Assembly: GCA_963924565.1 (NCBI GenBank)
Contig: OZ004609.1
Coordinates: 30,380,001 to 30,444,000 of the forward strand
Direction of reading: 5' to 3'
DNA: 64,000 bases
From: Ascidiella aspersa
Lineage: Eukaryota
Shown: positions 17,114 to 53,958 of the stretch, in pieces
Numbering within the stretch: position 1 is the first letter of the stretch
Layout: the number at the start of each line of letters is the position of its first letter
Position numbers and translations under genes: made by a program
The notes under the pieces: model-generated
The model's database searches: none
What the model saw: the letters and a program-made list of their open reading frames with translations, nothing else
What the model was told of the DNA's origin: nothing

Positions 17114-17152
<39 letters not shown>

Positions 17153-24882: not shown

Positions 24883-25163
24883 TAAGAGGCCACTGTGTTT
24901 TTGGTTTCTGTGGAACCTGGCTGAACTGGTTTAGGGCTTAAAATGATCTTAATTGAAATACAGAAGAGTCATTGCCTTTTGATCTTAAGATTATTATACT
25001 ACATTTGTCTATGCTTCACCAAAACTTCTTTAACCACCTCTTTAACAAAGCAATACCTTGCTTTAACACCATTTATTTGAAGCGAATAAATGCGATTATA
25101 TTTCAAAATAATAAACTGGTTTTGATGCCGTGTAAGTCGATTGAATCCCTTTTCCTTTCTTTG

Positions 25164-28100
25164 TTATCCTGAATAAAACACAACCCATTTGTTTGTTTTT
25201 TGCAATGCTGGTGAAATTATTTTACCAATAGTGAATTGCAACTTTGACTGTTGTCTGTATCTTAGACAAAAATCCATTCAGCTACTATAATTAAAAAAAA
25301 CGCACAAAGCATTTTGTTGAAAAATCTTGTTATGAAAAACATGTCCACAAATACAGGCAATAAAACGATCTTATTTTAAACTACTCACCCGAAAATGAAT
25401 ATATTAATCTAGGGCATTGGTATCTTGTCACACATTTTCCTTTCTTGTTCTTGTAGTAGTTGGGTTTGCAAGTGCAGCCCGATTTACACTCGGGGTAGCA
25501 TACGCGCCCATAGTTGCAAGTTCGCACGCATCGGTAACAACGTTTGTGTTCCATATTGAGTGGACACGTTGCTGTAATGCAATATATTGCAAAATGTTAC
25601 TAGCTTGTTACTTTTTCATTTTGCTAGACTAGTATTCACCGCAACAAGTGCATTTATATATTCAACCATATGAAGTAGCCTAATATTCAAGGCAGGGATG
25701 AACGTAGAATGATTTTCATACCGGTAAAATTAAAAAAATTGTTACCGAAACGTATAAAAAAGAGACGGCGTCGAAATGTTACGTCCTAACGGTACTACAA
25801 TGTTAAGTTAAATGCAGTTGAGGAAATGGCGGGATGGCCTACGGACCGAAAATGTTTTTTATCGCTGCACCATTCATGGCTTACTTTTAATACTAATTTA
25901 AGGAATATATAGGCCTGCGGACAATCTGTAAGTCGCAGCGCCTACTATTCAAAACTTGATGTTAACCTGTAGCACTTACGCTTGGGGCAGTATACAAAGT
26001 TATTAGGGGTACACATTCCGATCGGCTCACTCCAAACCCATCCCGGCGGACAGCTACACCCTGGCTTGCACGTGTATCCGGGGCAAGGGTTCGAATTTGG
26101 ATTGTACCAGTCGTGGCAAGTTTTCTTGCATGGCGCGCATTTCGGGTAGTAAATTTGCTTGCCAGTACATTCTGAAAGAAAAACCGATTGAAAAAAGCAA
26201 GATTTTTTGGTGAATATCAAGAAAAACGTTTTATTGAATTTGGATTAGCTGTTGTCATTGAAAGCAACTTTTCTTATATATTTTTAGTCTACTCTGCTAG
26301 ACAACGGTTACGTGATCTTTGACCTATCGGAGGCAATTTTGAGAAACAAACTGATAATTGAATTTTTCATGAAGTCAGAAGGAAACCGTGCTTTTAACTT
26401 ACTTTTGGGGCACATATGTGAAAGCACACATTTCTTCCCGTCCCAGTAGTAACCCTTGTATGCGCATTTGCACCCAGGCTTGCAATCTGCCGTACAAGGC
26501 TTGCCAATGTCTTTACAATCGTTGCAACCGACACATTTGTGATAGATCTGACCAGCAGGGCAATCTGTTTAAAAGTTGATTTGGTATATTTTGGGCTAAT
26601 TATTCGATTTTACCAAAAGAAAAGAGTAACAATCTGCTAACTAATTGAGGTAGGCCTAATATGAGCTCGACCCCCCAAAATAGTTAATTTTCGAGTTGTA
26701 AGAGAAAAGAATTGGGCCAAAATCTAATAAAATAAAAGGTTTAAAGTCTTACAATTGGGACATTTCTTCTCCAGAACACATTTGTTTCCGTCCCAGTAGT
26801 AGCCCTTGTATGCACACTTGCATCCAGGCTTGCAATCTGCCGTACAAGGCTTGCCAATGTCCTTACAATCGTTGCAGCCGACACATTTGTGATAGATCTG
26901 ACCAGCGGGGCAATCTGGTTAAATGTTAAGATGGCAAATTTAACGAAATGCAGTTCATTATTTGTTTTCACCGAAAGAAAAAAGTAACAGTCTGCCAAAA
27001 TAATAGGGCTAGGCCTAACTTGAGCAGAACCCTAAAAATACATAACAGTTTGATTTGCAATTTAAAAGAATTGGGCTAGAAACTATATAGCCTAATAGGC
27101 CTATAACGAGTTGTTCAAAGATCTTACAATTCGGACATTTGTTTTCCAAAACACATTTCTTTCCATCCCAGTAGTAACCCTTGTATGCGCATTTGCACCC
27201 AGGTTTGCAATCTGCCGTACAAGGCTTGTCAATGTCTTTACAATCATTGCAACCGACACATTTGTGATAGATCTGACCAGCGGGACAATCTGTTTAAATG
27301 TTGCATCAGTAAATTTAACGAATTGAAGTTGATTATTCGTTTTTTAACGAAAAAAAACAGTAATCAGTCTGCCAAACTAAAAGAGTTAGGTCTAGTATGA
27401 AATGAGCCTAAAGATACTTTACAGTGTGAGTTGCAATTAAAAAATTGGCACCGGAAACTAATATAATGAATTGTTCAAAGGTCTTACAATTGGGACATTT
27501 CTTCTCCAGAACACATTTGTTTCCGTCCCAGTAGTAGCCCTTGTATGCACATTTACATCCAGGCTTGCAATCGGCCGTACAAGGCTTGCTAATGTCTTTA
27601 CAATCGTTGCAACCGACACATTTGTGATAGATCTGACCAGCAGGGCAGTCTGTTTACAAGTTCAATTGGTAAATTTAACGAATTGAAGTTGATTATTCGT
27701 TTTTTATCGAAATAAAAGAGTAATAGTCTGTCAAACAAATAGAGGTAAAACTGAACCCAAAAACTTAATGTTTAAGTTTATATTAAAAAGAATTGAGCCA
27801 GAAACTAATATATTGAATTGTTCAAAGGTCTTACAATTTGGACATTTCTTTTCCAGAACACATTTCTTCCCGTCCCAGTAGTAGCCCTTGTATGCACACT
27901 TGCATCCAGGCTTGCAATCTGCCGAACAAGGCTTGCCAATGTCTTTACAATCGTTGCAACCCACACATTTGTGATAGATTTGACCAGCGGGACAATCTGT
28001 TTAAATGTCGAATCGGTAAATTTAAATAATTTAAGTTGACTATTCGTTTTTCACCAAAAGAAAACAGTAGCCTACCGAATCGGTCTGCCAAACTGATAGA

Positions 28101-29056
28101 GTTAGGCCTACTTTGAGCTGAACCCTAAAAAATAGTTAATAGTTTAAAAGAAACTAATATAATGAATAGTTTGAGGATCTTACAATTTGGGCATTTATTT
28201 TCCAGAACACATTTCTTGCCAGGCGTTTTCTACGATTTGCGATATTTTACCAGCTTTCAAATGGGCAGCCGGGCAAAGTATAAACTCTAATTATTGTGTT
28301 AGTGGTCCCGAGTCGGCTTGTACGTATTAATTTATACGTATGTGAGAAAAACCTACAAAAACTTACATTTAGGGCAATACTCCTTTTCGACGCAGTTATA
28401 GCCGTTTAAATAGTATCCTTTTGGACAAGCGCAGCCTGATTTGCATGCGCACCGGTCGTATGTTCCTACATCCTTGCAGTCAGTTGCACAAGGCTTGCAA
28501 CGGTGGTAGATCTGTCCTCGGGGGCATGCTGCAAACAATGTATATATCTATGTGCCTCTTAACTGCTAAGCGAAATCTTGTGTACACGTTTGAGATAAGC
28601 GCAATCCATCATTGATGAAACTTTTGCCTGCGATCGAAAAACCATACACTCGATCAAAAGAGTTTCGAAGTAAAACTGGTTAAAATAGACCCTTATTTTT
28701 CTAATACGTGCGAAATTATTGGCAGCAGCTTCGCACTGAAAGCAAAAAATCTGTTAAATTTTATTTAGGTTTTGGTGTTTCGTGCTTTATTTTAGCAGAG
28801 GCTGTTTTTTAATAGATTGTATTTTATAAACAACACTCAAGCAACTATTTTCCTCTGATAAATTTGTTCAAATTACCTCAATATAATTGTCAAATTACCC
28901 CCAATGTTAAACTTACCAACAGTTTAAGAACCACTTGATTAAACCTGTAGATGTAAAAAACAGAACTTATAACATTTACTTACTCGGATAATAATATGTC
29001 GCGCTGACCGCAGATAAAACGCTCAACAACAGAAACAGACAAACCAAGGATTTCAT
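25164..29056 (-). CDS. Secreted multi-TIL-domain protein A (signal peptide + 8 TIL domains; putative serine-protease inhibitor)
   Basis: Exons: 29056-28984 (MKSLVCLFLLLSVLSAVSA-TYYYP), 28528-28367, 27996-27835, 27649-27488, 27289-27128, 26914-26753, 26564-26403 (each 162 nt, one 10-Cys TIL), 26171-25980, 25571-25389, and a probable terminal exon 25168-25164 (GA TAA). The alternative end is read-through to TAG at 25383-25381. All introns are phase 1. Confidence 0.88.
26403..28220 (-). repeat. Tandem ~350-375-bp exon+intron repeat (5 full units plus a truncated 6th) within TIL gene A
   Basis: Near-identical 162-nt exons and alignable introns, with donors at 26403, 26753, 27128, 27488, 27835 and 28184. 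Confidence 0.92.
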
Positions 29057-32000
29057 CTTCAGAGGGAATTTTTCTTCTTCGTCTTTCTAGTTGTAGGCGA
29101 CTATGATAAGCTATGCTCGATGTGCATTGCTTTTATGGAAAAGTAATTGCTGATTATTTTATATAACTTAGTGTGACTTGACAAACGAGGGGAATTTCGC
29201 TTGGTTTGTTTGCAGTTGGTTATTCAGAGGTTTGGCCCTCCGGGCAATGACATTGCATTTGTTTTTTCCGTGCATTTAATTGCCTTAATTGTTCAGCCGA
29301 TCATACTGTCGTATAGAATTTTTTCTTTTCTTTCTTCGTGGTAAGAGAAACCTTGACTGACGGCTATAACTAAGTGGATTTTGTTTTAAACACATTTTTT
29401 AATCGCATAAAATGACTATGCTTCCATGTATAATGTCGCTTTAAAAATGACCGTTAGTTTAATTTCAACGCAGTGTTTAAAAACAAAATTTGGGGATCTT
29501 AATATTTTATTATTCTACTTGGCTCCCTAAGGAAGAAATTTTGAAGTTTTGGGAGGAAATTTGTTCCAGGCAGGGATTGGGGAGGAAAACTAGACAAAAA
29601 AAGTTATTTAATCGGCTATGTGGAGGAAAAAGTTATTTAACTCTAATGAGTACTGCTAGTATTGTAAAGAGTCTATTGGGGTCATAATCTAAGTGTATTC
29701 ATTCTTCACAGTTACGACCATTTGAGAAATATAAACCAATGCCAGCCGTTTTTAAATAGATAAAATGAATAACTACGTCATACATTAAAATAAACTCACT
29801 TTCAGACGATTAGCGAATCCAATTTTTGTAACAAGTCTTGGCTTTTGACGCAGATGTGTCTATTGCAGTTTTACATGTTTTGTTTTTAATTTTTCCAACA
29901 GGTTTCATTTTATGTCAGCAGTTTAGATCGAAGTAATAAAATAATAATGTAGATTACTTCATGGTTTTTGATGACGAGGAATTGGCAGTATTTGGGTTTG
30001 TTGTGGAGGAATTTAAAAAAACAACGTTTGTGAGGTTAAGGTTGTCTCGTTCTACACGCGATATAATTAGTTCGGCAATGATTTTGCAGTTTACTTTTTG
30101 AACTCTCATCGCACGCAAATTCGAACGCCGACTTCGCTAATGGTTTTTTCAGCGCCTGCGGATAAATATGGCGGAACGAATGTATTTCCAAACTAATCCG
30201 CGGCTTCTGAATTCATGTAATTCGTGAGTGCAAATTGCAAGTCATTCTATTTTAATACCGAGTCGGATCATTTCTAATTTATTTTTGCAAAAAAGCAAAA
30301 ATTCCCGCCAAGTCGGCATGGCCGTTAAAAGACAAAACAGTTTTGTTTGCGTCAAAAAAACACACCATTCGTTGAACATTCAGAATTGGTTTACATGTAA
30401 TGAACGCCATTGATAAATTGTTTATCAAACAATCGCTTGTGTTGTAAATTTTTGAGAGAAATTCAAGTTTAAATTAAAAGCCAAGGGTCTAAATTTTATT
30501 GTTGGACGCATTTTGAGTCTTTACATTTCTAATACCCAAAATTCATATATTTGTATTTGTTAACGGACGTGTGCAGGTGTGACAAGAATATGTTTTCCGT
30601 AAAATATATTTTGCTTTAGCACCAGAACTTCGTCTTCTAATAATAATCGTGGCGTGACTTCGGGTTAGTTGTGTATTATATATACTCGTAAATTTCCAAT
30701 ATAGCATAAAGTTATTGGTTACATGTCGAGTTTCCTCAGAAGTGTTAAGTAAACGCTTTGATTTTTCACCTTCATCAAATCCGAAGGCCGTTAGACAGGT
30801 ATAAAACTGATCTTAAAATGAAAACTTATAATAAAAAAAAATAAATGATCTTAAGTTGCTGGCTTGTACGGATATTTTTTGTACCGTTCATTGAGCGGAG
30901 CTGTTTGTTTCAAATATTTTTATAAAAAAACAACAAAAAACGTTGAATGCCTTGCATTTCCCGGGCAGTGCAAGGAAACTTCTGTATGAAATTCTTGCAC
31001 TCGCCCGCTATTTTTTGTCTGGTATTTGCGGAAGCAATATTTCGTAAGTGTCGATCGAACCTTAGTATAATTTGGCAAACTGCCTTAGGAATTCGATTTT
31101 TCGAAACATTCCTTATTTTAATTTAACATAGACCACACACCCAACACAAATGTAGTAATGCAATTAAGGCATTCAAAGAGTAAAATCTCGAAAATCTGGA
31201 AGGTTAATCTGATAGTGGTGTTTCTGAGTAAATGACGAAGTAAACATTTGTTTTTTGGGGAATGATTTCTGCATAAAATTGTTTTGGGTTACGAATTGTG
31301 TTTCTCTAAGTCTACATAATAGACAACTTTCATTTAAAAAATAATTTATTACACATATTATTAGCTACACTTTTTTAATTTTACAAAACCAAGTTTCGAT
31401 TATATAACCGGAAAATACTTGGTCGAGTGATTGATTTCAGTACCCTGAAAGCTTTCGGTGTGTAACCGTAATACAACTATAGTTTTATCTTTTTATATAA
31501 AAATAATTGTGTAAAAAGCATGATTTCCCAAAGCAACAATTAATCTGCCGCTAACCATTTTTGATGAATTATTATTATTGATGGATTTGTAATCACTTCC
31601 AAGATAACAAACCCCTAGTTTTGCCCTCCACTGTCGGAGCTTTCGATCAATTTCATATTTAGTAGGCCACTAAAAACATTAGGTATATTGCTGGCTTTTC
31701 AAAACAATTTCAAATTGAAAGTGTTTGCTATGGTGACATTAATTATAAACTCTTTAGTTTATTTGTTAAACAAACTATTATCTTTTAGTCCAATATTTAT
31801 ATTTTTACTTAAAGGATTATCAATACCTATAACATTTTATTATTTTAAGCTTTTTCTAGAAACACTCACTAGGGGGCACGAGGGAATACCCATCCCTCCC
31901 CTCACCTCAAACTAGATGTTTCGTTATTTTTACCCACATAAATAACTTAAAATTTCCCGCTTCGTGCGGATGTTGTATTGATTTTTACTAGTAATGGAAT

Positions 32001-32262
32001 ATAATTCCTTTTCATTAAAGCTGCCGTAATAGCCTTTAGTGCCTCCTAAATCAGCCTCTCTCCAAAATACAAACTATTCTAAGTCAGTTTAGTTATCGCT
32101 TTTGGTTTCGCGTTTTGTGCGAATCGACAACTCTTTGCGATATCTTTATTGTATCGTAAGTAACCCTTCTCCAACTCAAAAAATTAACAGGATAAACGCA
32201 CGTAGTCTTTGTTTTGTTCTCACGTGGTGCCTGTGCCATACAGGTCAACCGTCCTCTTAACT

Positions 32263-33200
32263 CAGGGGCGGGCAAAATACGGCCCGCGATAGGATTTTGA
32301 GCGCCCGCAGACAGTGTTCGGTTTTACGATAATGTGGCCCGCGGCCACAGTCTACCGCAATCCCCAATTACTTTCTTACTACGTCAAATAATAGTGATCG
32401 TTAGTTATTCTTTAGTTTTTGTTTTGGACTCCAGCCATAAGAGTGAAATAAGAACAACATCAACATCACACAGTTCGGAAATAAAACTAACACACAGTAC
32501 GGAATAAGACCAAAATAGGATTAATATTAAATAGTCGTAATACTGTCTAAATTGGAATAAGTCATAAAAAAATAAGACCTAAATGACCAGAATCACTAAC
32601 TCCACTAATAATTTCAACCCTAACCCATTTTCTAACCCCACCCACCGGCCACCAATAACCCAGAACAGGGCCAGAAAATCAGTTGCCAAAAAAGCGGCTT
32701 CAAACCAGGGCGCCCAAAATTCAACACCAAAGCGGCCAATGCCATGGCCCCCATCGTCCCATATCTTCTCCCTACAGTTTCAGACGATGTAGTTATTATT
32801 CTGTTGTATATATGATATTACTGCGTGTTTGGCTTTATTATGTCGTTGATGTTAATACTATGGTATTATTGATTTTTCTGCTTTAGGTGTTGTTGATTTT
32901 TAGGTCTTATTGTTTGTTCCAAATTTAGATTTAGAGTTTACATCAATATTATTCCTTGGATTTTGCCAAGAAACGTAAAGTTTAACAAAGATTGGATGCC
33001 GAAGTACTTTTTTAAGTCGGCAGGAAATAATCAGTTCTTTACAGGGTAATGGAAGTGTTGCCGTGTTTAAAGAGTAGAACATTAGCCGCCATTATGCGAA
33101 AAAAACATGTAGGCCATGGCAGCACAATTAATATATCGATCAGGAATCCGGCCCGCCAAGTACTTCAGTTTCCCATATCAGGCCCGCCGACTGGAGAAGA
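32263..33200. mobile_element. hAT-like non-autonomous element with a probable nested insertion
   Basis: Starts CAGGGGCGGGCAAAATACGGCCCGCG and ends with CGGCCCGCC repeats. The interior (~32400-32950) has inverted AATAAGACCTAAA / TTTAGGTCTTATT arms. Confidence 0.55.
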
Positions 33201-33809
33201 ACTATAAGTGAATGCTCTTTTCGCGCTTTCACTTAAACTTATAGGCGCCATCTCCTTGAATAAATTTAAATCAAATTCCAGTTAAACATTGCGCACCAGT
33301 TCGCTTGGAACAGAAAGTATTTTAAGATTAGGCCTACTTGTATTATAAGTTAACCTTGGGACGTTATCTCTGAAAAAATCCTTGTCTCCCAAGCCGAAAT
33401 ATAAGATCTGCCCAGGCAGCACTCACACAGTCCTTTGGGACATTTTCTTATTGTGTTTCCATGTCTCCTAAATTCTATAGCCGAATTCTCCAAAACATTT
33501 TTTCGGTATTGCTAAATACAGAATATACACAGCTGTTGTTTTATTCACTTGAATACATGTGGATAAATGCGATTAAATGTAGTTACAAGTGTGGAAAGAA
33601 CATCATGTCTTCCAGGTCATATCCATTTCCATCTTTACTTCTGCAAAATACCAGACAACATAAGAAAATAAATACATTACTTAGATTGCCTTTAAAATAT
33701 TATTATATTATTGTAACAATTGTTATTAAAATCAAGAATCAGTTTTTTTGTGCAAAACTAAAGATAAATAACTCAAATAAAAAAAAAATGCTTCATAAAA
33801 ACTTTATTT

Positions 33810-33923
33810 CAACTCAAGGTCAAGTCATTTTGCCCAAAATACTTAAGTCAAGTCAGATTATTTAAAAAATGATTTAATTGCACTTAGTCAAGTCATTGAC
33901 TTGCGTCATTCATTACAACACTG
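33810..33923. mobile_element. GACTTAAGTC-family MITE, right end
   Basis: aagtcaagtca repeats ending in CAACACTG, the reverse complement of the CAGTGTTG terminus. Confidence 0.65.
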
Positions 33924-33971
33924 GTAACCAGTCGGGCGCTTCAGAGATGCACCTAACATTTTTAAACTCAC

Positions 33972-36900
33972 CTAATAGTAATCGTCTTTGCACTCAGATT
34001 GCGTTATGCATTCATGGCCGTCCAAGAACTTGCCAGCGGGACACGCGCATCCGGGTTTGCAAATCCTCGGACAGGGCTTATTCACGTTCAAGTCGTGGCA
34101 CGTCTTGTTGCATGGAGTACATTCCCACCACACCTGCTCGTACGGACAGCCTATAGTCGAAAAAAAACGATTCCATTAGTGATTTCCAAAATATGTGCCT
34201 CGGTACACTAGTGTGCCACGAGAGATTGTCAAGTGTGCCGCGAAACTGTTTTGTAATTTTGGAAAATAAGTTATTTGCATTACCAATTAAATGTGCACTA
34301 GTCATTACAAATTAACAAAATTGAGTCATTTACATATAGTTTGTCGTATGTTAAGGCGATTGTAAAGTTAGCATATTGTTGTTCTGGTCAAAGTGTGCCG
34401 TCAAATATTTAAGATTTTTTTAGTGTGCCGCAAGCTAAAAAAGTTTGACAACCACTGCATTAACCGGGACCAAGATTCAGGTGCGTTGGGCTGTTTCACA
34501 AAAAGTAACAACATTAAAGGTATAGGGCGAAACGATTTAAAATCTCAATGTCGTTTATGGTTTCAATGTCGTTTATGGTTTCAGTAGAAATGACATAAGT
34601 TATATGAGCCGTAATTAAAAAATAAAATGTTTTCAGGCCATTACAAAGATACTCGCCTTTATGCGCATTGTAAGAAATTACTTTTAAACAAACGTAAAAT
34701 ATTATTGTAGTTTAATATAGAATAAATAACTTTTGTAACCTTCTTTTCCCCTAAATGAAGGGGTTACAGGTTACAGTTATTTATAATCATAAATCGGTTT
34801 AAGTTTAAAAACAAATGTAAATACTCTTTATATTTCCGGGGTATATAACTGCGAAAAATACATTTTTTTACTCTCATAAAAACTCGCCAATTTCAAATTC
34901 CCTCGTTTATAATACTGTTAACAATAAAAACGGTGACTTTGCGGGAGAAAAGATGTAAAGCAAAATTTTTTAAGTCTCACTTGTTTTGCATTGATCCTCG
35001 GTTACGCATTCGTATTTATTATAGTCCCAGTAGGTGCTGTTGGCGCACGCGCAACCGGGCTTGCATTCCTTGGTGCAGGTTTTGTTGCTCAAAACATCTT
35101 TGCATTTAAGGTGGCAGGGAAGGCATTGTTGGTAGGCAAGTCCATCGTAGCACCCTGTGAAGCAGAGCAAATGATCGTGTTACGTGGTTTGGATTTCCAA
35201 TATCAATATTTTAATAGATAAATGAAACTCTCAAGGTATACTCACTTATTTCTACTACTACCAGCTTGTCAAAACTAAAATATTTGTAGTTTTCTTTACG
35301 AAATCACCTTATATTATGTGTATTTCAGATCCCTTTCTTATCGACATTTTGGAGCTATTTCCAATAATTTTTGCTTTGAAACACTGATTTTTGCTTTGAA
35401 ATAAATTTATTCATTTTGTATGTTTGATGACCCAAGGCTATACGTAATAATATATAGTACAAAGGGTAATCGATCGCCAAGAGACGCTGTTATTTGATAT
35501 TTAGGTTAATTTTGGCGATAAAAGTCACATATGTTTCAGCGTGCACCCTAAAGAAATAACCCCCGGTATTTCTTCCATGCACTTCCACGTTACCATGTCT
35601 AAAACCAGGTTAAAAATCAAACTGTTTGATTTTTACCGTGACTATGTCACATCGTTCTTGGTTAAATAACAAGCGTTCCAAAAATTACCCAAACAAATTG
35701 GGAAAATACGGAAAAATACAAGCCAAACATATTGACTTACGTAGTAAGAATATCATAGCTCATACAGAAGTGGTAACATTTGTCCAAATACCTCCAACCA
35801 TTATGCTCCTTAATATCCACTTACGTTCTTTGCACTGCTGTTTAGTGAGGCATTTGCCATCGTCCCAGTAGGATCCCACCGGACAAGCGCAGCCAGGTCG
35901 ACAAATCGCAAAGCAGGGCTCGTTAGAATCCAAGTCGTCGCAATCCGTCGCACACGGAACGCACTCGTGATGGACCAGGCCTGCTTTGCATTCTTTTAAA
36001 ACATTAATACGATTAAGACCTAAAAATGAATCCCTGTTTGCTAATGCATGGGAACAGTTTTATTTGATTGATTAATAGATTGGACGGGCCAGTTGGTGCT
36101 CGTTCTTTTTGTTGGCCCTCACTTAAGAACCATTTTTTCAGGGTAAAATTAATTCGGACCAATTACCAATTGTTGTAAGTAATTTTTAGGCCTAATGACT
36201 TAAGTCCAAATCAAGTCACTTTTAAAAGCACTCAAGTCCAAGTAAAGTTGTTTTGAATAAATACCAAGTCAGGTCCCAGTCAACTCCTAGTCATAAAAAT
36301 TTAACGTTAAACTATAAAAAAATGATAAACTCGTCCGATTGATCAATAACTCAACTAAAAACTAATACAAACGCATAGTATAGCAAAGAAATTGTTTTAT
36401 GGGCAAAACTTAAGATGAAAGTCAAATCAAGTCATTTTACCCAAATGACTTCAGTCAAGTTAAATCGATTAAAAACATTGACTTAAGTCATTAGAATACT
36501 GCAATTACCCGAATTGTTTTTTGTCAGTATAGCTTTTTTCATATGCGACGTAAAAACACAGCCTAAACCTTACGTATTGGACACTGGTAGCGACGGACAC
36601 ACTTCATTCCGTTCCAATAGCGCCCTTTCGGACATTTGCATCCGGGTTTGCACAATCTCGGGCAGGGCTTGCCAATATCGCTGCAGTTTGTGCACCCCAC
36701 GCATTCGGAGTACATCTGGCCAGGAGGACAGGCTGCAGAAACAGTTTGGAATTAATGCACATTCCACTACTGTATAGGTGGAAAAACAATAATGCTATTA
36801 TTTTATTGTTTGCAACTTACTATATAGAAACACTACTAAACACTGAATAACACGAAAATCATCGTTTATGTAAATGCCTATTTATATTAAAATGTTATAT

Positions 36901-39900
36901 TCCCGTTTTGCTTTTTAATTTTTTTTAGCAACAATATAGTCCTACCCACCGAAGAAAACATGATGAAATTTAATTATCAAGTTGTCAGAAACAAATAAAT
37001 TATAACCACCTGTGTGTCAAATAATGCTAAAACAATACGATAATAACCTACTAATTTGCATTGAAACGTTCGTTGAAAAATAGGCCCAAGTGCCATATCA
37101 ATATATACCCTAAAGCCTAATACATCCGTCTACCTCTTAGGTTCAAGTATCACTGGGTAAAAAGGAGCATATCCTAAAATAAGCTGATGCTTACTTATTG
37201 GACATTGATTCGGTGGAACGCACGAAGAACCGTTCCAATAGGAACCAGGGCTACACGCACACCCAGGTATACATACTGCTGGACAAGCTACGATCTGGCC
37301 AGCGTCACTGCAGTTGAAAGCACAGGATGGACACTCCTGGTAGACCTGGTTGGACGGGCAGGCTATACACAGACAAAAAGTATTTCATTGATAAAATCTA
37401 TAGTTCCCGTTCTTTAAAGGTTAAAATGTGTGTGGGGAAATATTACTTCGGACATATGTATGTAGGCCTATTAAGTTTTAGTGTGACAGCTAATATAACG
37501 GTTAATCGCGAACACAAGAAGAAAAGGCCAATTAGGTGATATAAGGTTCTCTAGAAGGAGTTTATAAACTTATTTCCACAATGCTTTCACTGTTAATCTT
37601 AAAATAGAATGATCTGCATTATGCAAACAGGTTCTCACATAAATGAGTAGAGCCACAGACAGTGCAAAGATCACTTAAAAAATTCGTCTACCTCTTGGGT
37701 TCAATTATCACTTGGCAAAAAAATTCATGCTCTCAAAACTGCTGATGCTTACTTTTTGGACATTGATTTGGTGCAACGCACAAGGAACCGTCCCAGTAGG
37801 ATCCTGGGCTGCACGCACATCCTGGTATACATACATCTGGACAAATTACGATCTGGCCCGCGTCACTGCAGTTGAAAGCACAGGATGGACACTCCTGATA
37901 AACCTGGTTGGACGGGCAACCTACACAGAAAAAAAGTATTTGTATGTACTCCAATAATCAATACTTGTCGTTCTTTAAAGTTAAATTGTGTGGGTTGCGA
38001 TATTTTATTTTGGACATGTATTCGTTTTTAGTGTCACAGCTAATATCAACACAAAATGAACAGGCCTTTTATAGGTGATTATACAAGTTTTTGCAGAAGG
38101 AGTCGCGCTGGAGCTCTGAAAAATACATTTTATTTTCACATATTATGTTTTCACAGTAAATTTTAATGTAGAATGATCTGCATGATGCAGACAGGTTTTC
38201 ACATAAATATAGACACGTACAGATAGTTAAAATATCGTTAAAAATGTAAAAGCTTGCTAGCCAAGTCTTCTCATTGAGTCCTTAGGGTCCTTCTTGCAAA
38301 CCCTTTATGCCACACTAAGCGGCCTCCACCCAGTCTAGGAACCTCTGTTATATGGTAAATCTTTAATTTAAAAAAATATTTTGTTAGGCCAAGCGATGCT
38401 TTTTTTATAGATCAAGCAATTCGCCTTACTTGGCGGGCATTGGTCGGGTGCTACGCACTTCGTTCCATCCCAAACGTGCCCTTCTACTCGGCATTTACAC
38501 CCAGGAATGCATACAAGTAAACAGGGCTTGTTAAGGTCTTTGCAATCGTTGCAGCCAACGCATTCGCTGTAGATTTGGTCTTCCGGACAATCTATTTAAA
38601 AAAATGATTTTTAATATAATCAAAATGAAAAATAATTAAAAGATAAAAAAATGTTTGTTTTTAGTCGAATAAAAGCTGTTTCAGCTAAGGCTGTGTATTC
38701 TAAATACATAAAATCATAGTAAACGTATAGTTTTTATTTGTTTTATCTTTAGTTATATTCACAAGTGCTTAACTATTTTGTTTTATTAAATATATTTATT
38801 ATGATGTTTGGGGAATATCCCGAACTAATGTCAACCTACGCATCTGTGGCAGCACTATTTAAAAACGGTTTAGTTAAGGCTAATCTGGTTAATCCAGTTT
38901 CATGTTGGTGAAATACACTTGTGCAAATAAAAGGGTACAATTGTATGAACCTAAAAAACTTTAACTTTAAAAAATGTTCATGTATTTTTTTCACGTTCAA
39001 GCAAATAGCGTACACTAAATAAACAGCGTAACCAGTTGGCACTATAGAAAGAAAAATTGTATTGAATTCTCACAATCTTTTGCACTTCGTCTGGTCAAAG
39101 TAACAATGAATCATGTTTCATTTCTACTTTGACCTGATGGAGCACGGTTGTGCGAAAGCTTGTCGAAAATTCAATACAATTTTTCTTTTTAATTGCCACC
39201 TGATTACACCGTTCAGAATTAGAAAAATACGTCCATTTACTAACATTAAAAAAATAGCGTAGACTGCTATGTAAAACGCTTTATATGTGATAGTTATGTA
39301 TTCCCTTACAGTTTGCACATTGTTTCGGCGCGACACAGTAAGATCCGTTCCAGTAGGTTCCAGAAGTGCAAGCACAGCCAGGAATGCACGCACGACAAAT
39401 CACTTTCGAATCCAAGTCATTGCAGTTGAAACGGCAAGGCGGGCAGGTTTGGAAGACTTGGTTCGCCAGACAAGCTGAATGAACGAGATGATAAAACGTC
39501 AAATTGTTTTGTTTGGGCGGGATAACTGCAAATCACCGGATATAATATTTTGTGTCGAAATTTATGAACATAACTATCTTTAAACGAACGAAAAAGGGAA
39601 ATATTAACTCCATGCGCCGTAGTTTGGTGACTCCTGGTTTAAAGGTGAAACGTAGTATACACGGATTCTTGCATGTCGAGGATTGTTTTCTTCTTAAAAT
39701 ATTATACATATAAATAGCAAAGCCAAATCGGATGAGTAAACGACATCATCGTTATGAAGACTTTTCGATAACTATAATTGTATCATCATTAGTTATAACA
39801 ACTGGAATCCATTTAATCCCCGCTTATGACCGGAATTTTGGGTACACTTTACTGTAGCCTATAGGTTAAATATAATAATATCACAGCAGAAAAGGTCGAG

Positions 39901-42900
39901 TAAATACACATGTATACTCGACCTATTTGGCTTTGTTGTTTATGCTCAAGCTACATCACAGGTCGGTGAGTAGTATGCCGAAATGTCATAATTGATTTAA
40001 TAATAATCAAAGTATTCTTTCGAATAACAAAATCTACCTGAATCCGTATGGTGAAAACAAACGATTCTGGTTGCACATCAATGATAAAGATCAAACTAAG
40101 TACAAAGCTTAGTAAACCGAAAATCAGTTTGTTTGTATGTTACAAAAAGATAAATATATTTCGCTATAAAGCATCATCAGTATCTTAATTCGAATGAATC
40201 CATTCGTATGAATTTCAAAACACTTCGACGGTTGTTTCTCCTCGTAACGATAGCACATAGTCTTACTTGGAGGGCATTGGTCGGTTGCTACGCACTTCGT
40301 TCCGTCCCAAACGTGTCCTTCTACTCGGCATTTGCACCCAGGATTGCATATAAGTAAACAGGGCTTGTTAACGTCTTTGCAATAGTTGCAGCCAACGCAT
40401 TCGCTGTAGATTTGGTCTTCCGAACAAACTTTAAAAAGCAGGTTTAGATATTGCAACGATATGCATCTAGTGGTTTAACAAATTATTAAAAGTTAAGTAA
40501 GGTATCAGAACGCTCTTTCTAGCTGATAAATTCTTTATATACATATATATACAAAAACACAAAGTGTACGCCTTCCACGGTTAAATTTCACGTTTCTCAA
40601 CCCAATGGTCGCCTACTCCAGTAGCTCACATGTAAACATTTATTGAGATGGGTGTTTAGCAAAACTCATACCAAATTTAAAAACCTGTAGCTATAGAAAG
40701 ACATGCTGACATCATTTTTATTGAAATGATATTGTTTCTATGTTTTTCTCAGTTAAGATCCAAAAAGGTTAAGAAAATTGCATGGGTCATCAAAGATTTG
40801 TGTTATACTCATGCTAAGTATTTCGGGTAGCAGCGAAAAATGTTAAAAAGGCACTAGAAGTAGATATTCGCACAATCGACAAGTAACATTTAACAGTTTT
40901 ACCTTTGGGACATTGATTCGGTGCAACGCATAAAGAACCATTCCAGTAGGAACCAGGGCTACACGCACATCCCGGTTGGCAAATTAACGGACAAGCTACG
41001 TTCTGGTCCGCGACACTGCAGTTGAAAGCACAGGATGGACAATCCTGGTAGACCTGATTGGACGGGCAGACTGTATAGATAAGAAGAAACAAATGCTAGG
41101 TTATTTTAGTTACTCAAATATTCTATAATTCTCTAATGGTTGCATAGTAGGTTGCGATATTTTAATTGTATTCCATTTTAATGTAACAATTATACCGGTT
41201 AATCGCAAAACCGCTGTAAGAAATATATTTATTTCGACAATGCGTTCACTGTTATTTATAATGTAGAATGATATGCGTTATGCAAAACGTTTTTTAGATT
41301 AGCATAAGAGAGAAACAATTATTTGATTAGAAGATATTTACACAGTTTTGCCAAGTAAGACTTTAACACTCTTACAGTTTGGGCATTGCGATTGATTGAC
41401 ACATTTCATGCCGTCCCAGAACTGTCCACTGCTGACTGGGCATCTGCATCCCGGCTTGCAAATTCTCGAGCATGGCTTGCCAATATTGCTGCAGTTTTGG
41501 CAACCAGCGCATTCGGAGAACTCCTGGCCAGCTGGACATTCTGAATTAAGCATTAGAGCATGCTGTAAAGTTTTTACCGTTCTGCCGAAAAATAAGTGTT
41601 GTCTACGGCTCTACGCTATCCGCTCCGACTCTACTTCAACTATAGATTGACTCGGTATTTAGCATTTTAGCGCGATTGGACGTGACACATATGGTTAGCT
41701 TGCACTTAGTTTGAATCTGAATGAATCAAAATAGTTAGTTAGCGCGTTACGGTGTGAAGTTATTGTGTGACGTCAATTGTAGCCTAAATGTCCTCGTCCC
41801 TCCAACAATCCGGATTTCCGTTTGAAATAAGCTATAAATCTAAGCGGTAAATTTTACTGGCTTTGCGACAAAATGGCAATTTTTTAGACAGGCGGTGATT
41901 TAATATCAGTGTCGTAAACAAGTCATTTCAAAATGACTTAAGCCCCAGTCAAGTATTTTGTAAAGTAACTTAAATCCAAGTCAAATCTTTTGAATAAATC
42001 ACAAGTCAAGTCATAATTATAGCAGGTCAATTCAAAGTTCAGTACTTGTTATAAAAATTAAACGTCCACTAAAATGGGTATACTCTCTCGATTATTAGCA
42101 ATATCTCACCTAAAAAATAGAAAAACCCAACACAGAGCAATATGTTGAACAATTAAGATAAATAACAAGTCTAGTAATATGTACAAAAGGCTTAAAGCTA
42201 CTGAAATAATTTGTCCGAAAGACTCAATTCAAATTATTTACAAACAGGGACTGGAATTAAATAATCAAAAGGAAAACTAATCTTACTTATGGGGCATTGC
42301 TGTGGGTAGACACAGGCCGTTCCATTCCAAAACTGACCCCTGACCCGGCATTTGCACCCGGGCTTGCAGATTTTCGGACAGGGCTTTCCGACGTCATCAC
42401 AGTTGTTGCATCCGACGCACCGCGTATAAAACTGACCGGTTGGACAGACTGTAAGCAAATCAAAACTTTCATGTGCATAAAACCGCAGTCGGTGTCGCCA
42501 TATTTCATGGGCTAATGTTGGAGTTGGCAGCGAGTGGTTTTGTAAACAAATAAAAAGCTTTACAAAACATCATAGAAAGTTTCCTTTAATAATTTCTGCA
42601 AAAGGTAAGCAAACTTGAGTTTGCAATTTGTAATAAGTTTTAAAGTATGTTAATGAAACAACCACCAACTAAACGTAATTTAACAAATCGGTTTAGGTCA
42701 TAGTAGAGACAATCGAGTCTGCCCCAACAAAATTAAGTTGGATAGCCTCTATATACCAAATAGACTCGATTCTAGTGGTTGGGGAACCACGGCTGAACGC
42801 TATCATATGACCAGAAGTAATTAAACCTTTATATACTTTTGCAAAATTACCGTTGGGGCACCAATTGGCGTACACACAGTCTTTGCCATTCCAGTATTGA

Positions 42901-45517
42901 TTCCTTCGACACCTGCAGCCGGTTTTGCAGTCCTTGGTGCAAGTCTTGTTGGTGCCCAAGTCTTTGCAATCGGTTACGCATGGCAGACAGTAGCTTAAGT
43001 ACTGACCGTCCGGGCAATCTGACAATTGGTAAACAAACAGTGATTGTTTTAGGATTTTAAAGCACTGCGTAAAAAAGTAAACATCTTGGAAAGACGCAAG
43101 TCTGTCAAAAACTTATACAACTAAATTTTCCCGATTGAGTTGTATGTTTTTAAGACAGGCTTGTGTCATTCAAAGTTAAACAATCATGCTGTGTCCGCCT
43201 GTGTGAGCTGACATAGGCTAGCTAACCTAATCGTATGGTAATTAATCGTTAATGTAAATCACAAAGGGCAATTCGGGTCAGTAACAATGGCCCTGTCAGT
43301 ATTTTTTATCAATTGTTGCTCTGCCCACTACTGGAACTTACTTCTTCGCAGTTTGTATAGTAAGTTTTGTTTACAATATTGGGAATGGAAGATATTGGGA
43401 AACTTACCCTGAAGAAACTAAAACGGGCCTATTTCCCTTTTGTCGTTCCAGTATTGTGCCACATTCCCAACTATAAGTCAGCAGATAAAAATGATGGGAT
43501 ACTGAAACCTTCACCAATTAATGTTTCCTCAAAAAAAGTTCTGGCCTATTGCAAAAGTAATATTAAGTATAATTATAAAATGTGTACCTTTTGGACATTG
43601 GTCTTTTGTCACACATTTCTCGATGTCGTCATTCCAGTAAGTGTCTTTGGCGCAAGCACACCCGGGTCTGCATTCTTTGGTACAGGTTTTGTTATAGGCG
43701 ATGTCGTCGCAGTGCAAATGGCAGGGACGACACTCGTGAAAAGCCAGGTAATCCGGACAACCTTTGTACGAAGAAAATCGACCATTTTCACAAAAGCGCT
43801 TTAAGAAGCAGATTGATTTAAAAGCGGCAATGTATCCTGACGATTAATTTATTTCCAATTTGGAATTACACTTTTCCAAGAAAATTATGTGAGATGAGTA
43901 GTTTTATCGTAACGAACATACGGATTTACGCTGGACCATCTTTGGGGATCCTTTTTTTTAATCGCTGAAAAAATCTAGGACTATAGCCAAGGGGTTCTTA
44001 AACTCGGGGCGCCGTGAAGGACTCTCCTAAAAAAAATGTTTTTATTTATTTAATATCAAGTTTGGCTAACACGATAAATTCTTTTTAAATACTTTTTAGT
44101 CGTGACTAACACAGATTATTTTTTAGTTTATTCCAATCATTAATCACCTCAGTAGCCAAATTCTCGTTTTCAGTTGACCTGAATATGACAGAATATACTT
44201 ACTTTGAACACTGTACAGTGTTGTCAGAGGGAATTGTATTAGACCATTCCTCGAAACTATATACTTTTGCTAATTCACTAAATCAATCCAAACGATTTTC
44301 GCGCATCGCGAGGACGAGTTTATTTGTTGTAGTCCTTTTTACTGTTAATACTTTTATATAGGATGTATTTCCAGTTAAAAGGCGCCCACGCGTTTTATTT
44401 TCCAAATGCTATTAAGACTCTTTAAAGTCCTCTTGCCCTTAGGGTAATGACAACGCATAGGGTAATGACGTCATTTGTATTGGATCGGTCGGCTGCACTT
44501 TTCGCCAAGGCATCAGACATTTCAAGGCGTCAGTTTTAAAATGTTAGACAACCATAAAAGCGTAACGCGCGTCTCCCGGACTCACGTTTGCACTGATCCT
44601 TGGTCACGCATTCGTCTCCGTTCCGGTATTTGTCGGCAGGACACGCGCATCCTGGCCTGCATTCCTTGGTGCACGTCCTGTTGCTCAGCACGTCCTCGCA
44701 CTCCAAGTGACAAGGAACGCATTGGTGGTAAATCAGGCCGTCGTCGCAACCTTTAAAAGATTTTGTATACGTTATAGGCGCGAAAAAGTCAAAGTTATCG
44801 TGGTCGAAAATATAGTGTATAGTGTTTCAGCCCAGGTGCACAAATGCACCGCCTTACTAAGTCATTTACGCAGTTAGAATTTCTTCTCGGGTATTTTCAG
44901 AAGCAGCTATAGCTTTTAAGATTCGCCGATAAACCTTACCAAAGCAAAAAACAGTCAAAACGCAGAAAGACATGAAGCTGTATAAAATAAATATGAACTT
45001 TGCTCGTATTTTGTTGAAATTATATGCTAATTTAATACTAATTTACAAGGTTCGAAATTCATTTAGGATATGCCTTAAAATATGCCTGTATGACATTTTC
45101 TTTGTATGAATTTTTTAGGGGGAACACTGGTCCAGGCGAATTGCGGAGCTGTGCTTATTTTCACGCTTTGAAAAACTTATTGGGAGTTTTTAATGTAAGA
45201 AAAAAAATTAAGCCAAGATGAAACAATTTGTTTTTCTCAAAATTTTTGACACTTACCCCCGACCTCGTTCTATTAGAAAGTTATGTCGGCACTATTATGC
45301 CTATATATGGACCTGCTGGTCTGTCTTTCCTATCGCAAACCGGTGGTATACTCTTTGTTGCAAAAGCAAGAAAGGTAATGCAGATAGAAAACGTATCAAA
45401 TCGTCTACGCCACAAACAAAACATTTAAAAACATTACTTACGGCGGCCGTAATAGGTTGCGTAGGCTGTCGAACAAGCAGTAGCCAACACGAGAAACAAT
45501 AGAGTCGAGAAGTTCAT
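33972..45517 (-). CDS. Secreted multi-TIL-domain protein B (signal peptide + 15 TIL domains; putative serine-protease inhibitor)
   Basis: Exons: 45517-45442 (MNFSTLLFLVLATACSTAYA-TYYGR), 44750-44586, 43761-43588, 43018-42851, 42448-42287, 41540-41376, 41070-40903, 40428-40267, 39474-39310, 38591-38430, 37920-37753, 37362-37195, 36732-36574, 35992-35825, 35154-34981, 34150-33972 (...CKDDYY TAG). Every internal exon is 159-174 nt, phase 1-1, and encodes one 10-Cys TIL domain. Confidence 0.88.
34177..34457. mobile_element. hAT (Charlie-like) MITE
   Basis: TAGTGATTTCCAAA...GTGTGCCG repeats...AAGTTTGACAACCACTG. Confidence 0.75.
36170..36501. mobile_element. GACTTAAGTC-family MITE
   Basis: Clusters of gacttaagtc/caagtca at both ends, terminating in AATACTG. 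Confidence 0.65.
39024..39211. mobile_element. Foldback/hairpin MITE
   Basis: ~80-bp imperfect inverted arms (CAGCGTAACCAGTTGGCAC...AAAGAAAAATTGTATTGAATT...GGTCAAAGTA and its reverse complement) around a ~22-nt spacer. Confidence 0.75.
41907..42240. mobile_element. GACTTAAGTC-family MITE
   Basis: Starts CAGTGTCG, then caagtca/gacttaag repeats collinear with the 36170 copy. Confidence 0.6.
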
Positions 45518-45583
45518 CTTCACACAATTCCAATCCTGGTCTCGAACAGTTGATTTGTGATTGATTATCCTGGCTCCTTCTCG

Positions 45584-45594
45584 CTTTATATATC
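45584..45594 (-). promoter_or_regulatory. TATA box of TIL gene B
   Basis: GATATATAAAG on the minus strand ~70 nt upstream of the ATG at 45517. Confidence 0.6.

Positions 45595-48600: not shown

Positions 48601-53958
<5,358 letters not shown>

What the first reader, a model, noticed from the sequence alone, without database searches (positions are those of the whole stretch)
25164..45517. Tandem pair of TIL-only secreted genes: a modular one-exon-one-domain inhibitor system with opposite evolutionary modes
Seen: two co-oriented genes, each with a signal-peptide exon ending in a shared TYY motif, then 8 or 15 symmetric phase-1 exons encoding one 10-Cys TIL domain each. No vWD, C8 or mucin domains were found, so these are not zonadhesin, mucin or SCO-spondin. 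Both appear to have a last intron at the stop codon. Established: in Ascaris-type (MEROPS I8) TIL inhibitors the reactive bond lies between Cys5 and Cys6. Inference: gene A has amplified one specificity (avidity) while gene B has diversified specificities (breadth). Together they resemble an expandable, lineage-specific protease-inhibitor or defence array.
Basis: partly seen in the sequence, partly recalled or inferred. Interest (0 to 1): 0.8.

Follow-up and report, generated by a model that had tools for sequence, protein, structure and literature searches.

The report
Two tandem TIL-repeat secreted-protein genes
A sea-squirt chromosome carries two neighbouring genes for secreted proteins built only of 8 and 15 copies of one small cysteine-rich (TIL) module, one module per exon; they are real and one is expressed, but this is an ordinary kind of animal gene and its protease-inhibitor role remains unproven.

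Summary
Observation confirmed. On the minus strand lie two co-oriented genes. Each has a signal-peptide exon ending ..ATYY, followed by 15 (gene B) or 8 (gene A) phase-1/phase-1 exons. All 23 of these exons hit Pfam TIL. RNA-seq reads confirm most of gene A's exon chain, its strand and the intron one codon before its stop. They show no reads between 29200 and 30999, upstream of gene A's first exon. No vWD or C8 exon lies on this chromosome beyond 2.5 Mb.

New here:
- Gene A's five near-identical modules are old copies (dS 0.24-0.70) kept alike by purifying selection (dN/dS 0.03-0.14), not by recent amplification.
- A 4-TIL paralogue with one central module lies about 325 kb away.
- RNA joints among the repeat exons vary, from exon skipping or repeat polymorphism.

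The modules are no closer to Ascaris-type inhibitors than to von Willebrand factor TILs. The putative P1 column is not unusually variable. Frog Rdd proteins show that TIL-like-repeat-only proteins can be matrix proteins. TIL-only proteins exist in other ascidians, for example a 13-TIL Ciona "zonadhesin".

Verdict: new member of a known kind, modest interest. The scan had already noted gene B on this same stretch (s1-802043, s1-802437).

The parts
45584..45592 (-). TATA-like box (TATATAAAG) upstream of gene B
   Evidence: Read directly from the sequence; 67-75 nt upstream of the ATG. Function not tested.
45442..45517 (-). Gene B exon 1: ATG, signal peptide, ..AYATYYGR, phase-1 donor gtaagt
   Evidence: The exon end was read by hand; the table used a wrong end, 45448.
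33972..44750 (-). Gene B, 15 TIL exons: B1 44586-44750, B2 43588-43761, B3 42851-43018, B4 42287-42448, B5 41376-41540, B6 40903-41070, B7 40267-40428, B8 39310-39474, B9 38430-38591, B10 37753-37920, B11 37195-37362, B12 36574-36732, B13 35825-35992, B14 34981-35154, B15 33972-34150 (ends ..DDYY, TAG)
   Evidence: Splice sites and phases; 15 of 15 hit Pfam TIL. No junction codon is a stop. No RNA evidence was obtained for this gene. The predicted CDS is 2583 nt, or 860 aa; this is the total corrected by hand for exon 1.
29157..29165 (-). TATA-like box (TATATAAAA) upstream of gene A
   Evidence: RNA depth is 12 in 29000-29199 and 0 from 29200 to 30999, so transcription starts between this box and the ATG.
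28984..29056 (-). Gene A exon 1: ATG, signal peptide, ..VSATYYYP, phase-1 donor gtaagt
   Evidence: The joint to A1 is seen in 26 RNA reads, placed one base off the canonical site (28529/28985). I take this, by inference, for a base difference at the exon's last position in the RNA-source animal.
25389..28528 (-). Gene A, 8 TIL exons: A1 28367-28528, A2 27835-27996, A3 27488-27649, A4 27128-27289, A5 26753-26914, A6 26403-26564 (A2-A6 are the repeated central module), A7 25980-26171, A8 25389-25571
   Evidence: 8 of 8 hit Pfam TIL. RNA joints: A2>A3 18 reads (+5 offset), A3>A4 11, A4>A5 32, A5>A6 11, A6>A7 33, A7>A8 34. The A1>A2 joint is not among the 15 joints shown (2 were not shown). TRF reports period 347, 4.6 copies, at 26426-28069.
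25050..25168 (-). Gene A last exon: completes the Gly codon, then TAA (25164-25166), then 3' UTR with AATAAA. It lies antisense to the 3' end of the DSS1 gene.
   Evidence: The joint 25168/25389 is seen in 34 RNA reads; sequence. The 3' end (~25050) is estimated from the AATAAA and was not measured.
24649..24882 (+). Neighbouring DSS1/SEM1 gene, convergent with gene A (context, not part of the system)
   Evidence: Pfam PF05160, 75 bits. Reads on the opposite strand at 25000-25199.

Best explanation
These are two separate, tandemly arranged paralogous genes of an ascidian. Each encodes a secreted beads-on-a-string protein: a cleavable signal peptide, a short Tyr-rich N-terminus, then TIL modules joined by linkers of 2-4 residues between most modules (longer after A8). 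Gene A has 8 modules (about 474 aa) and gene B has 15 (about 860 aa). Every module has exactly 10 Cys and no linker has a Cys, so all Cys can pair within modules (5 disulfides each).

Inferred: the proteins most likely act as multi-headed canonical (Laskowski-type, MEROPS I8-like) serine-protease inhibitors. Each module would present the loop between Cys5 and Cys6 to a protease. On this reading gene A carries five heads with Ala at the putative P1 (elastase-like targets). Gene B carries heads with P1 Lys/Arg (9 of 15 by the alignment, 8 by strict register), Leu (3), Ala (2, or 3 by strict register) and Asp (1).
For: - Architecture.
- RNA: one search shows most of gene A's exon chain, GT..AG ends on the minus strand, first mates on +, and zero depth from 29200 to 30999.
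- No vWD or C8 near the locus.
- Loop: 20 of 23 modules have a three-residue Cys5-Cys6 loop. The residues at the second position are those typical of inhibitor P1 sites.
- P1 register: in silkworm BmSPI38 the mutagenic primer context reads A-C-V-[P1]-A, so P1 is the second residue after a Cys (passages of PMC10004685).
- Precedent: silkworm TIL proteins with 3-6 TIL domains, in tandem lineage-specific clusters, with different predicted P1 residues per domain (passages of PMC3278429).
- An even Cys count and Cys-free linkers argue against covalent multimers.
- Solved TIL inhibitors are among the best sequence and fold matches.
Against: - No assay exists.
- The profile of the 23 modules scores higher on non-inhibitory VWF TILs (38.7 and 33.3 bits) than on any solved inhibitor (at most 34.9 bits).
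- The model of the central module fits VWF TIL better (TM 0.75-0.76, rmsd 2.0) than inhibitors (TM 0.57-0.63, rmsd 2.7-3.7), and no Foldseek E-value reaches 0.001.
- The putative P1 column is not hypervariable relative to other columns.
- Gene A's loop T-A-D has Asp at P1'. A1 has a one-residue loop, B8 a two-residue loop, A7 a four-residue loop, and A8 has Pro at the putative P1.
- B1, B2, B3 and B14 carry an N-glycosylation sequon (N-x-T) immediately before Cys5.
- Frog Rdd proteins, which are secreted and built of repeated D-domain-like modules, act in the extracellular matrix (PMC3968263).
- Gene B has no transcript evidence here.
Confidence: 0.5

Rival explanations
1. The proteins are extracellular-matrix or structural TIL-repeat proteins, not inhibitors. 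The modules would serve as protein-protein interaction or cross-linking beads, as in Xenopus Rdd proteins, VWF/mucin TILs or cystine-knot repeat adhesive proteins. They would sit in tunic, mucus net, blood or an adhesive secretion. The Tyr-rich ends and Tyr linkers could serve cross-linking.
For: - The best per-domain sequence and fold matches are VWF TILs.
- Rdd proteins consist of repeated D-domain-like modules, are secreted and N-glycosylated, form high-molecular-weight complexes under non-reducing conditions, and have a reported Ciona savignyi homologue of 270 aa (passages of PMC3968263).
- The paralogue A' has the same overall plan of a signal peptide plus four modules.
- Frog proteins with 4-5 TIL-like modules are the best non-ascidian matches of gene A's central module, at 38-42% identity.
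- Gene A is basic and rich in Lys and Tyr: 9-10 Lys and 4 Tyr per 53-aa central module, and the split codon between A1 and A6 is Tyr at all five junctions.
- All three leaders end in TYY, and gene B ends in DDYY.
Against: - There is no free Cys to make intermolecular disulfides.
- There is no collinear module-by-module correspondence to the frog proteins; every gene A module matches their first two modules best.
- I did not verify that those frog proteins are Rdd.
- The flatworm adhesion paper states that no adhesive function of TIL domains has been reported (passages of PMC8621496).
- There are no tissue data.
Confidence: 0.3
2. The proteins are secreted TIL-repeat proteins with another binding function, such as antimicrobial or pathogen-binding activity, or gamete or egg-coat interaction as the automatic name 'zonadhesin-like' would suggest.
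For: - The relatives in Ciona, Phallusia and Clavelina carry only automatic names such as zonadhesin, zonadhesin-like or uncharacterized.
- The genome holds several further TIL arrays on the same chromosome, some mixed with other Cys-rich modules. This suggests a broadly used binding scaffold.
Against: Nothing specific supports it. True zonadhesin has MAM, mucin and vWD domains (recalled), and vWD and C8 are absent here.
Confidence: 0.12
3. The two loci are one gene, or are parts of a larger vWD/mucin-type gene.
For: They are co-oriented and only 4.9 kb apart. Gene B has no transcript data here.
Against: - B15 ends in an in-frame stop, and polyA-like signals follow it.
- Gene A has its own TATA-like box, ATG and signal peptide.
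- RNA depth is zero from 29200 to 30999, upstream of gene A's exon 1.
- No vWD or C8 match lies anywhere on the contig beyond 2.5 Mb.
Confidence: 0.03

Closest known systems
Ascidian TIL-only proteins annotated automatically as zonadhesin or zonadhesin-like: Ciona intestinalis XP_078481982 (757 aa), Phallusia mammillata A0A6F9DXU9 (709 aa)
   Same: They are ascidian proteins, and Pfam finds only TIL in them: 13 stretches in the Ciona protein and 8 in the Phallusia one. A signal peptide is evident in the Phallusia sequence as read; the Ciona model begins within a TIL module. The Phallusia protein is the best match of 19 of the 23 modules, at 44-53% identity for those modules.
   Different: They are not one-to-one orthologues; no module match exceeds 55% identity among the 150 best representatives. 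The Phallusia protein also carries an unannotated 8-Cys module that genes A and B lack. None is functionally characterised in the papers I could search.
Silkworm multi-TIL serine protease inhibitors (BmSPI43, 45-49; MEROPS I8-type)
   Same: They are secreted proteins of 3-6 TIL domains, in tandem lineage-specific gene clusters, with different predicted P1 residues per domain (passages of PMC3278429).
   Different: They are insect proteins with fewer domains. The inhibitor activity documented in the passages I read is for single-domain members. There is no orthology.
Ascaris chymotrypsin/elastase inhibitor C/E-1 (1EAI), bee AMCI (1CCV), frog BSTI (1HX2) and LL-TIL (8HWU)
   Same: They share the 10-Cys TIL fold. 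They give profile matches of 24-35 bits and fold matches of TM 0.57-0.63.
   Different: They are single-domain proteins. The modules here match VWF TILs at least as well. Inhibition is untested here.
Xenopus Rdd (repeated D-domain-like) proteins
   Same: They are chordate secreted proteins made only of repeated TIL-like modules. The four-module plan equals that of paralogue A'. A tunicate homologue is reported (PMC3968263).
   Different: They have a matrix and vascular role and form disulfide-linked complexes. There is no collinear module correspondence. Genes A and B have 8 and 15 modules.
von Willebrand factor / gel-forming mucins / zonadhesin / SCO-spondin (vWD-C8-TIL assemblies)
   Same: The TIL module itself. 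VWF D1 and D2 TILs are the best-scoring solved relatives.
   Different: There is no vWD, C8 or mucin region in or near the locus.

Membership tests
Pfam TIL (PF01826) domain family | Match to the family HMM above the gathering score | tested here: met
   23 of 23 exon peptides match at E <= 0.01, best E 3.7e-11; the one score shown is 33.8 bits against a cut-off of 24.5.
Pfam TIL (PF01826) domain family | Ten conserved Cys in the TIL spacing | tested here: met
   Ten Cys columns are invariant in all 23 modules. The disulfide pattern 1-7, 2-6, 3-5, 4-10, 8-9 is taken from PMC10004685 and was not tested.
Pfam TIL (PF01826) domain family | TIL fold | tested here: inconclusive
   The AlphaFold model of module A5 has pLDDT 88. 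The top Foldseek hits are all TIL structures (probability 0.93-1.0, TM 0.57-0.76), but no E-value reaches 0.001.
MEROPS I8 (Ascaris-type canonical serine protease inhibitors) | Exposed reactive-site loop between Cys5 and Cys6 with a plausible P1 residue | tested here: inconclusive
   20 of 23 modules have a three-residue loop with K, R, L, A, D or P at the second position. A1, B8 and A7 have loops of 1, 2 and 4 residues. Non-inhibitory VWF TILs have the same loop length (alignment), so the feature does not discriminate.
MEROPS I8 (Ascaris-type canonical serine protease inhibitors) | Closer to proven inhibitors than to non-inhibitory TILs | tested here: not met
   VWF TILs score 38.7 and 33.3 bits against 34.9-24.1 for inhibitors. 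TM is 0.75-0.76 for VWF against 0.57-0.63 for inhibitors.
MEROPS I8 (Ascaris-type canonical serine protease inhibitors) | Measured tight-binding inhibition of a serine protease | not testable with these tools
   Needs recombinant protein and enzyme assays.
Zonadhesin / gel-forming mucin / VWF / SCO-spondin | vWD domain(s) in the same gene | tested here: not met
   There are 107 VWD matches in the genome, and none on contig C3 beyond 2.5 Mb; the locus is at 30.4 Mb. 150 of 157 candidates were scored.
Zonadhesin / gel-forming mucin / VWF / SCO-spondin | C8 domain next to TIL | tested here: not met
   There are 74 C8 matches, and none on C3 beyond 2.5 Mb. 95 of 95 candidates were scored.
Xenopus Rdd family | Signal peptide followed only by repeated D-like (TIL-like) modules | tested here: met
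   The four-module form is seen only in paralogue A'.
Xenopus Rdd family | Module-by-module (collinear) homology to the frog four-module proteins | tested here: not met
   All gene A and A' modules score best on modules 1 or 2 of the 272-aa frog protein P0097; in the five-module P0067, A8/A8' score best on modules 4 and 5 and A1/A1' on modules 3-4. No collinear order appears in either. I did not confirm that P0097 and P0067 are Rdd proteins.
Xenopus Rdd family | Disulfide-linked high-molecular-weight extracellular complexes | not testable with these tools
   Needs non-reducing western blots. The absence of odd Cys argues weakly against it.

The most novel reading that the evidence does not exclude
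Gene A is not an inhibitor. It would be a Lys/Tyr-rich cystine-knot polymer unit, in which the TIL scaffold is reused as a cross-linkable structural or adhesive bead. Five selection-frozen modules are separated by single Tyr residues, and the termini are Tyr-rich. The number of beads would vary between transcripts or alleles, because the symmetric exons can be skipped or recombined (extra and backward joints). This would link it to the Tyr-rich split-TIL family noted elsewhere in this genome, and would parallel mussel Mfp-2-type EGF-repeat adhesives (recalled).
Probability: 0.12. Interest if true: 0.6.

Novelty: new member of a known kind. Interest (0 to 1): 0.3.

Why it matters
If the inhibitor reading holds, these genes are a compact natural example of how symmetric phase-1 exons let a secreted inhibitor change its valency (gene A) and its specificity range (gene B). 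Tunicates are the closest invertebrate relatives of vertebrates.

The clearest new result is the contrast within gene A. Five module copies have diverged at silent sites about as far as their introns, yet remain almost identical as protein. This points to a single, strongly constrained binding partner and makes the central module a good candidate for expression and target fishing.

Otherwise the finding is ordinary. TIL-only proteins are widespread: 1523 representatives match at E <= 0.001, and many have 5-38 modules. Other ascidian genomes already carry automatically annotated examples.

Tried and rejected
- The search for homologous proteins with one 53-aa module found nothing. That tool only sees proteins of about 29-93 aa, so the blank says little.
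- Single-module phmmer searches of the PDB found nothing useful; only the 23-module profile worked.
- The search of 1.84 billion representatives with the profile gave no close orthologue. Local blastp of every module against the 150 best hits gave at most 54.7% identity. Only the best 150 could be examined, and cluster representatives stand for relatives down to 50% identity.
- I tested whether gene A or A' is the ascidian Rdd orthologue by module-wise scores against two frog proteins. There was no collinearity, so I rejected it as orthology and kept it as a functional analogy.
- I looked for similarity between the 3' ends and the 5' flanks of genes A and B and found none.
- I looked for a hypervariable reactive loop in gene B; it is not distinguishable from other variable columns.
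- The ESM Atlas look-up of the unannotated 8-Cys module from other arrays gave only a 0.80 hit without a family.
- Paper searches found no characterised ascidian TIL-only protein: 'TIL domain'+ascidian; trypsin inhibitor-like+cysteine-rich+tunicate+protease inhibitor; zonadhesin+Ciona; 'TIL domains'+Ciona; PF01826+tunicate. Supplements were closed. Figure S3 of PMC3278429, which holds the P1 alignments, could not be seen.
- Gene B's transcripts could not be examined, and I used it on gene A.
All searches and the fold were exon by exon or on alignments of single-exon peptides.

Full report
WHAT IS THERE. The window is G000:C3:30380001-30444000 of a 308.6-Mb, 75-contig assembly. An earlier follow-up note of this scan calls the genome a sea squirt (s1-788740). 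This fits my own result that the nearest relatives of these modules are proteins of Phallusia, Clavelina and Ciona. The window has no N.

A scan for stop-free, Cys-rich stretches found 23 TIL-like segments on the minus strand between 25384 and 44826. It found none in the gaps 28547-33975 and 44826-53026. Each segment has a phase-1 AG acceptor just before its first Cys. Each also has a phase-1 GT donor, mostly gtaag, 1-3 residues after its tenth Cys; in A8 the acceptor lies two codons before the first Cys and the donor eight residues after the tenth. This gives exons of 159-192 nt.

Two leader exons were found with the pattern M..TYY. Gene B starts at ATG 45517 and gene A at ATG 29056, and both have phase-1 gtaagt donors. 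The 23 exon peptides align with ten invariant Cys and one invariant Gly. All 23 of 23 match Pfam TIL PF01826 at E <= 0.01; the one score shown is 33.8 bits against a cut-off of 24.5. No junction codon is a stop. The predicted products are about 474 aa (gene A) and 860 aa (gene B). The total for gene B is corrected by hand because I had entered a wrong exon-1 end; the right end, 45442, is read.

TRANSCRIPT EVIDENCE. One RNA-seq run of the same species label (X3, raw reads) and one DNA-like run (X1) were laid on 25000-30999. From X3, 588 reads were laid, with about 6 in 100 of the run read. Depth sits on the predicted exons, with first mates on the + strand. The joints have CT..AC ends on the + strand, which is GT..AG on the minus strand.

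Joints that match the prediction, in reads:
- exon 1 > A1: 26, placed one base off the canonical site. I take this, by inference, for a base difference at the last exon-1 position in that animal.
- A2 > A3: 18, plus 5 offset by two bases
- A3 > A4: 11
- A4 > A5: 32
- A5 > A6: 11
- A6 > A7: 33
- A7 > A8: 34
- A8 > last exon: 34

The A1 > A2 joint is not among the 15 joints shown; 2 joints were not shown. The last intron (25169-25388) leaves one base of a Gly codon in A8. X1 shows none of the joints, so they are not DNA forms in that run.

Its stop TAG is followed at once by GTGAGT. However, polyA-like signals lie about 95 and 165 nt downstream, so an intron there is possible but unproven.

UNEXPECTED JOINTS. 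Further joints link the repeat exons out of order:
- A2 > A6: 13 reads
- A3 > A6: 9
- A3 > A5: 5
- A1 > A4: 5
- backward A2 > A2: 6
- backward A5 > A4: 4 (all)

The three joints into A6 sum to 33, which equals A6 > A7. All the repeat exons are symmetric, so skipping would keep the frame. The backward joints cannot come from simple skipping on the reference order. The RNA animal also differs from the reference at many exon positions. I therefore cannot separate three explanations: exon skipping, alleles with a different number or mosaic of repeats, and assignment of reads among 87-95% identical exons. This remains unexplained.

HOW THE GENES EVOLVED. TRF finds a 347-bp unit in 4.6 copies. It corresponds to exon plus intron for A2-A6. 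Between these units the exons are 87-95% identical and the introns 66-80% identical with gaps. Nei-Gojobori estimates between the five exons give dS 0.24-0.70, dN 0.008-0.069 and dN/dS 0.03-0.14 (only about 29 synonymous sites per pair, so the estimates are rough). Silent sites have thus diverged about as far as the introns. The near-identity of the five modules as protein (1-6 differences in 53) is maintained by purifying selection, not by recent amplification or recent gene conversion.

The RNA reads agree. Of 28 coding differences from the reference in gene A, 22 are synonymous and 6 are not. Three of the six change a copy towards the common residue. Some of these 'differences' may be reads of sister copies.

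A paralogue (A') lies at C3:30767635-30770482, about 325 kb away. It has the same leader (..SATYYYP), exons matching A1, one central module, A7 and A8. It also has the same G|gtgagtag donor and a near-identical last exon starting GATAA. Between A and A', the central module has dN/dS 0.12, while A7 and A8 have 0.50 and 0.39.

In a module tree, A1/A1', A7/A7' and A8/A8' pair with strong support. A6 pairs with the A' central module inside the A2-A6 group (85/90). Gene B falls into several types: B6/B8/B10/B11 (99/98), B7/B9 (99/97) and B4/B5/B12 (87/92). Deeper branches are unresolved. Gene B's recent duplicates have dN/dS 0.14-0.35.

The whole genome lists 116 TIL matches, 20 of them in this locus. 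Further TIL arrays without nearby vWD lie on the same contig at 17.85, 21.81, 26.89, 30.77 and 35.78 Mb.

WHAT IT IS NOT. There is no vWD match (107 in the genome; 150 of 157 candidates scored) and no C8 match (74; 95 of 95 scored) on contig C3 beyond 2.5 Mb. So the genes are not zonadhesin, mucin, VWF or SCO-spondin, whatever automatic names their relatives carry.

WHAT IT DOES.

I could check the P1 register only indirectly. The BmSPI38 primers in PMC10004685 place P1 as the second residue after a Cys. That P1 lies between Cys5 and Cys6 in the Ascaris inhibitor is my recollection.

By that register, gene A's five central modules read T/S-A-D, so P1 is Ala. By the alignment, gene B's 15 modules have K (5), R (4), L (3), A (2) and D (1); B8's two-residue loop RA would give Ala by the strict register, making R 3 and A 3. 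A1, B8 and A7 have loops of 1, 2 and 4 residues, and A8 has Pro. These residues suit an inhibitor array. Silkworm multi-TIL inhibitors in tandem clusters with different predicted P1 per domain are a direct precedent (passages of PMC3278429).

Three tests failed to favour the inhibitor reading.
- The 23-module profile scores 38.7 and 33.3 bits on VWF TILs. It scores 34.9, 33.4, 30.0, 28.9 and 24.1 bits on LL-TIL-mut1, LL-TIL, Ascaris C/E-1, AMCI and BSTI.
- The model of module A5 (pLDDT 88) superposes at TM 0.75-0.76 on VWF TIL and at 0.57-0.63 on the inhibitors. No Foldseek E-value is below 0.001.
- The P1 column of gene B has an entropy of 2.15 bits, within the range of many other columns, which reach up to 2.92 bits.

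A real rival exists. Xenopus Rdd proteins are secreted, consist of four repeated D-domain-like modules, and form high-molecular-weight complexes under non-reducing conditions. They act in vascular development, and a Ciona savignyi homologue is reported (passages of PMC3968263). Frog proteins of 4-5 TIL-like modules are the best non-ascidian matches of gene A's central module. However, module-wise scores show no collinear orthology, and I did not verify that these frog proteins are Rdd.

Against covalent multimers, every module has exactly ten Cys and no linker has one.

Gene A is basic and rich in Lys and Tyr. The split codon between A1 and A6 is Tyr at all five junctions. This keeps a cross-linking or adhesive reading open, though the flatworm adhesion paper states that no adhesive role of TIL domains is reported (PMC8621496).

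I put the inhibitor reading at about 0.5, a matrix or structural role at about 0.3, other binding roles at about 0.1, and a fused or larger gene at about 0.03.

NOVELTY. The profile finds 1523 representatives at E <= 0.001, many with 5-38 TIL stretches. The closest are ascidian proteins named zonadhesin, zonadhesin-like or uncharacterized. They include a Ciona protein of 757 aa in which Pfam finds 13 TIL stretches and nothing else. No module match among the 150 best exceeds 55% identity. There is thus no evident one-to-one orthologue, though the fast evolution of ascidians and the top-150 limit weaken that statement.

Five paper searches found no functional study of an ascidian TIL-only protein; the library does not hold most subscription papers. 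The scan itself had already noted gene B on this same stretch (s1-802043, s1-802437).

Verdict: a correct and careful observation of an ordinary kind of gene, a new member of a known kind, with an unproven function. The selection pattern in gene A and the variable repeat joints are the parts worth following.

Noticed in passing
L004 4636-7482 (G000:C3:30767635-30770482, + strand): A four-TIL paralogue of gene A. It has the same ..SATYYYP leader, one central module instead of five, the same G|gtgagtag terminal donor and a near-identical last exon. The duplicated block aligns to window 24519-29260 at 74-92% identity.
   Followed up: yes
L004 7757-8117 (- strand) versus window 24649-24882 (+): The duplication block also carries a second DSS1/SEM1 copy whose reading frame is split between two frames, so it looks like a frameshifted pseudogene. 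The window copy is an intact 77-aa ORF (Pfam 75 bits) with reads on its strand just downstream.
   Followed up: partly
L001-L009 (G000:C3 at 17.85, 21.81, 26.89 and 35.78 Mb): Further TIL exon arrays without nearby vWD. Several interleave TIL exons with an 8-Cys module (..C..PC....CP..P.A.C...YCGGC.A.F..) that has no Pfam hit and only a 0.80 Atlas hit. One array ends in a thyroglobulin type-1 exon. The same unannotated module occurs in the Phallusia 'zonadhesin' A0A6F9DXU9.
   Followed up: partly
window 26403-28528: The RNA joints among the repeat exons include skips (A2>A6, A3>A6, A3>A5, A1>A4) and backward joints (A2>A2, A5>A4). Exon skipping, repeat-number or mosaic alleles, or circular RNA cannot be told apart with one run.
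   Followed up: partly
window 29800-29999; window 22952-23161: DNA word depth is 923 in one 200-base bin against about 47 around it. A 207-base stretch is 97.6% identical to L004 345-551, in both orientations. These are probably dispersed or inverted-repeat mobile elements.
   Followed up: no
window 53026-55990 (- strand): Alpha-tubulin-like exon (Pfam Tubulin, 61 bits, at 53057-53389), downstream of the locus.
   Followed up: partly
window 16001-20000: GC rises to 0.43-0.51 with strong negative GC skew. An ORF at 17113-17319 (-) ends in a run of 12 Cys codons, that is, a trinucleotide repeat. Not examined.
   Followed up: no
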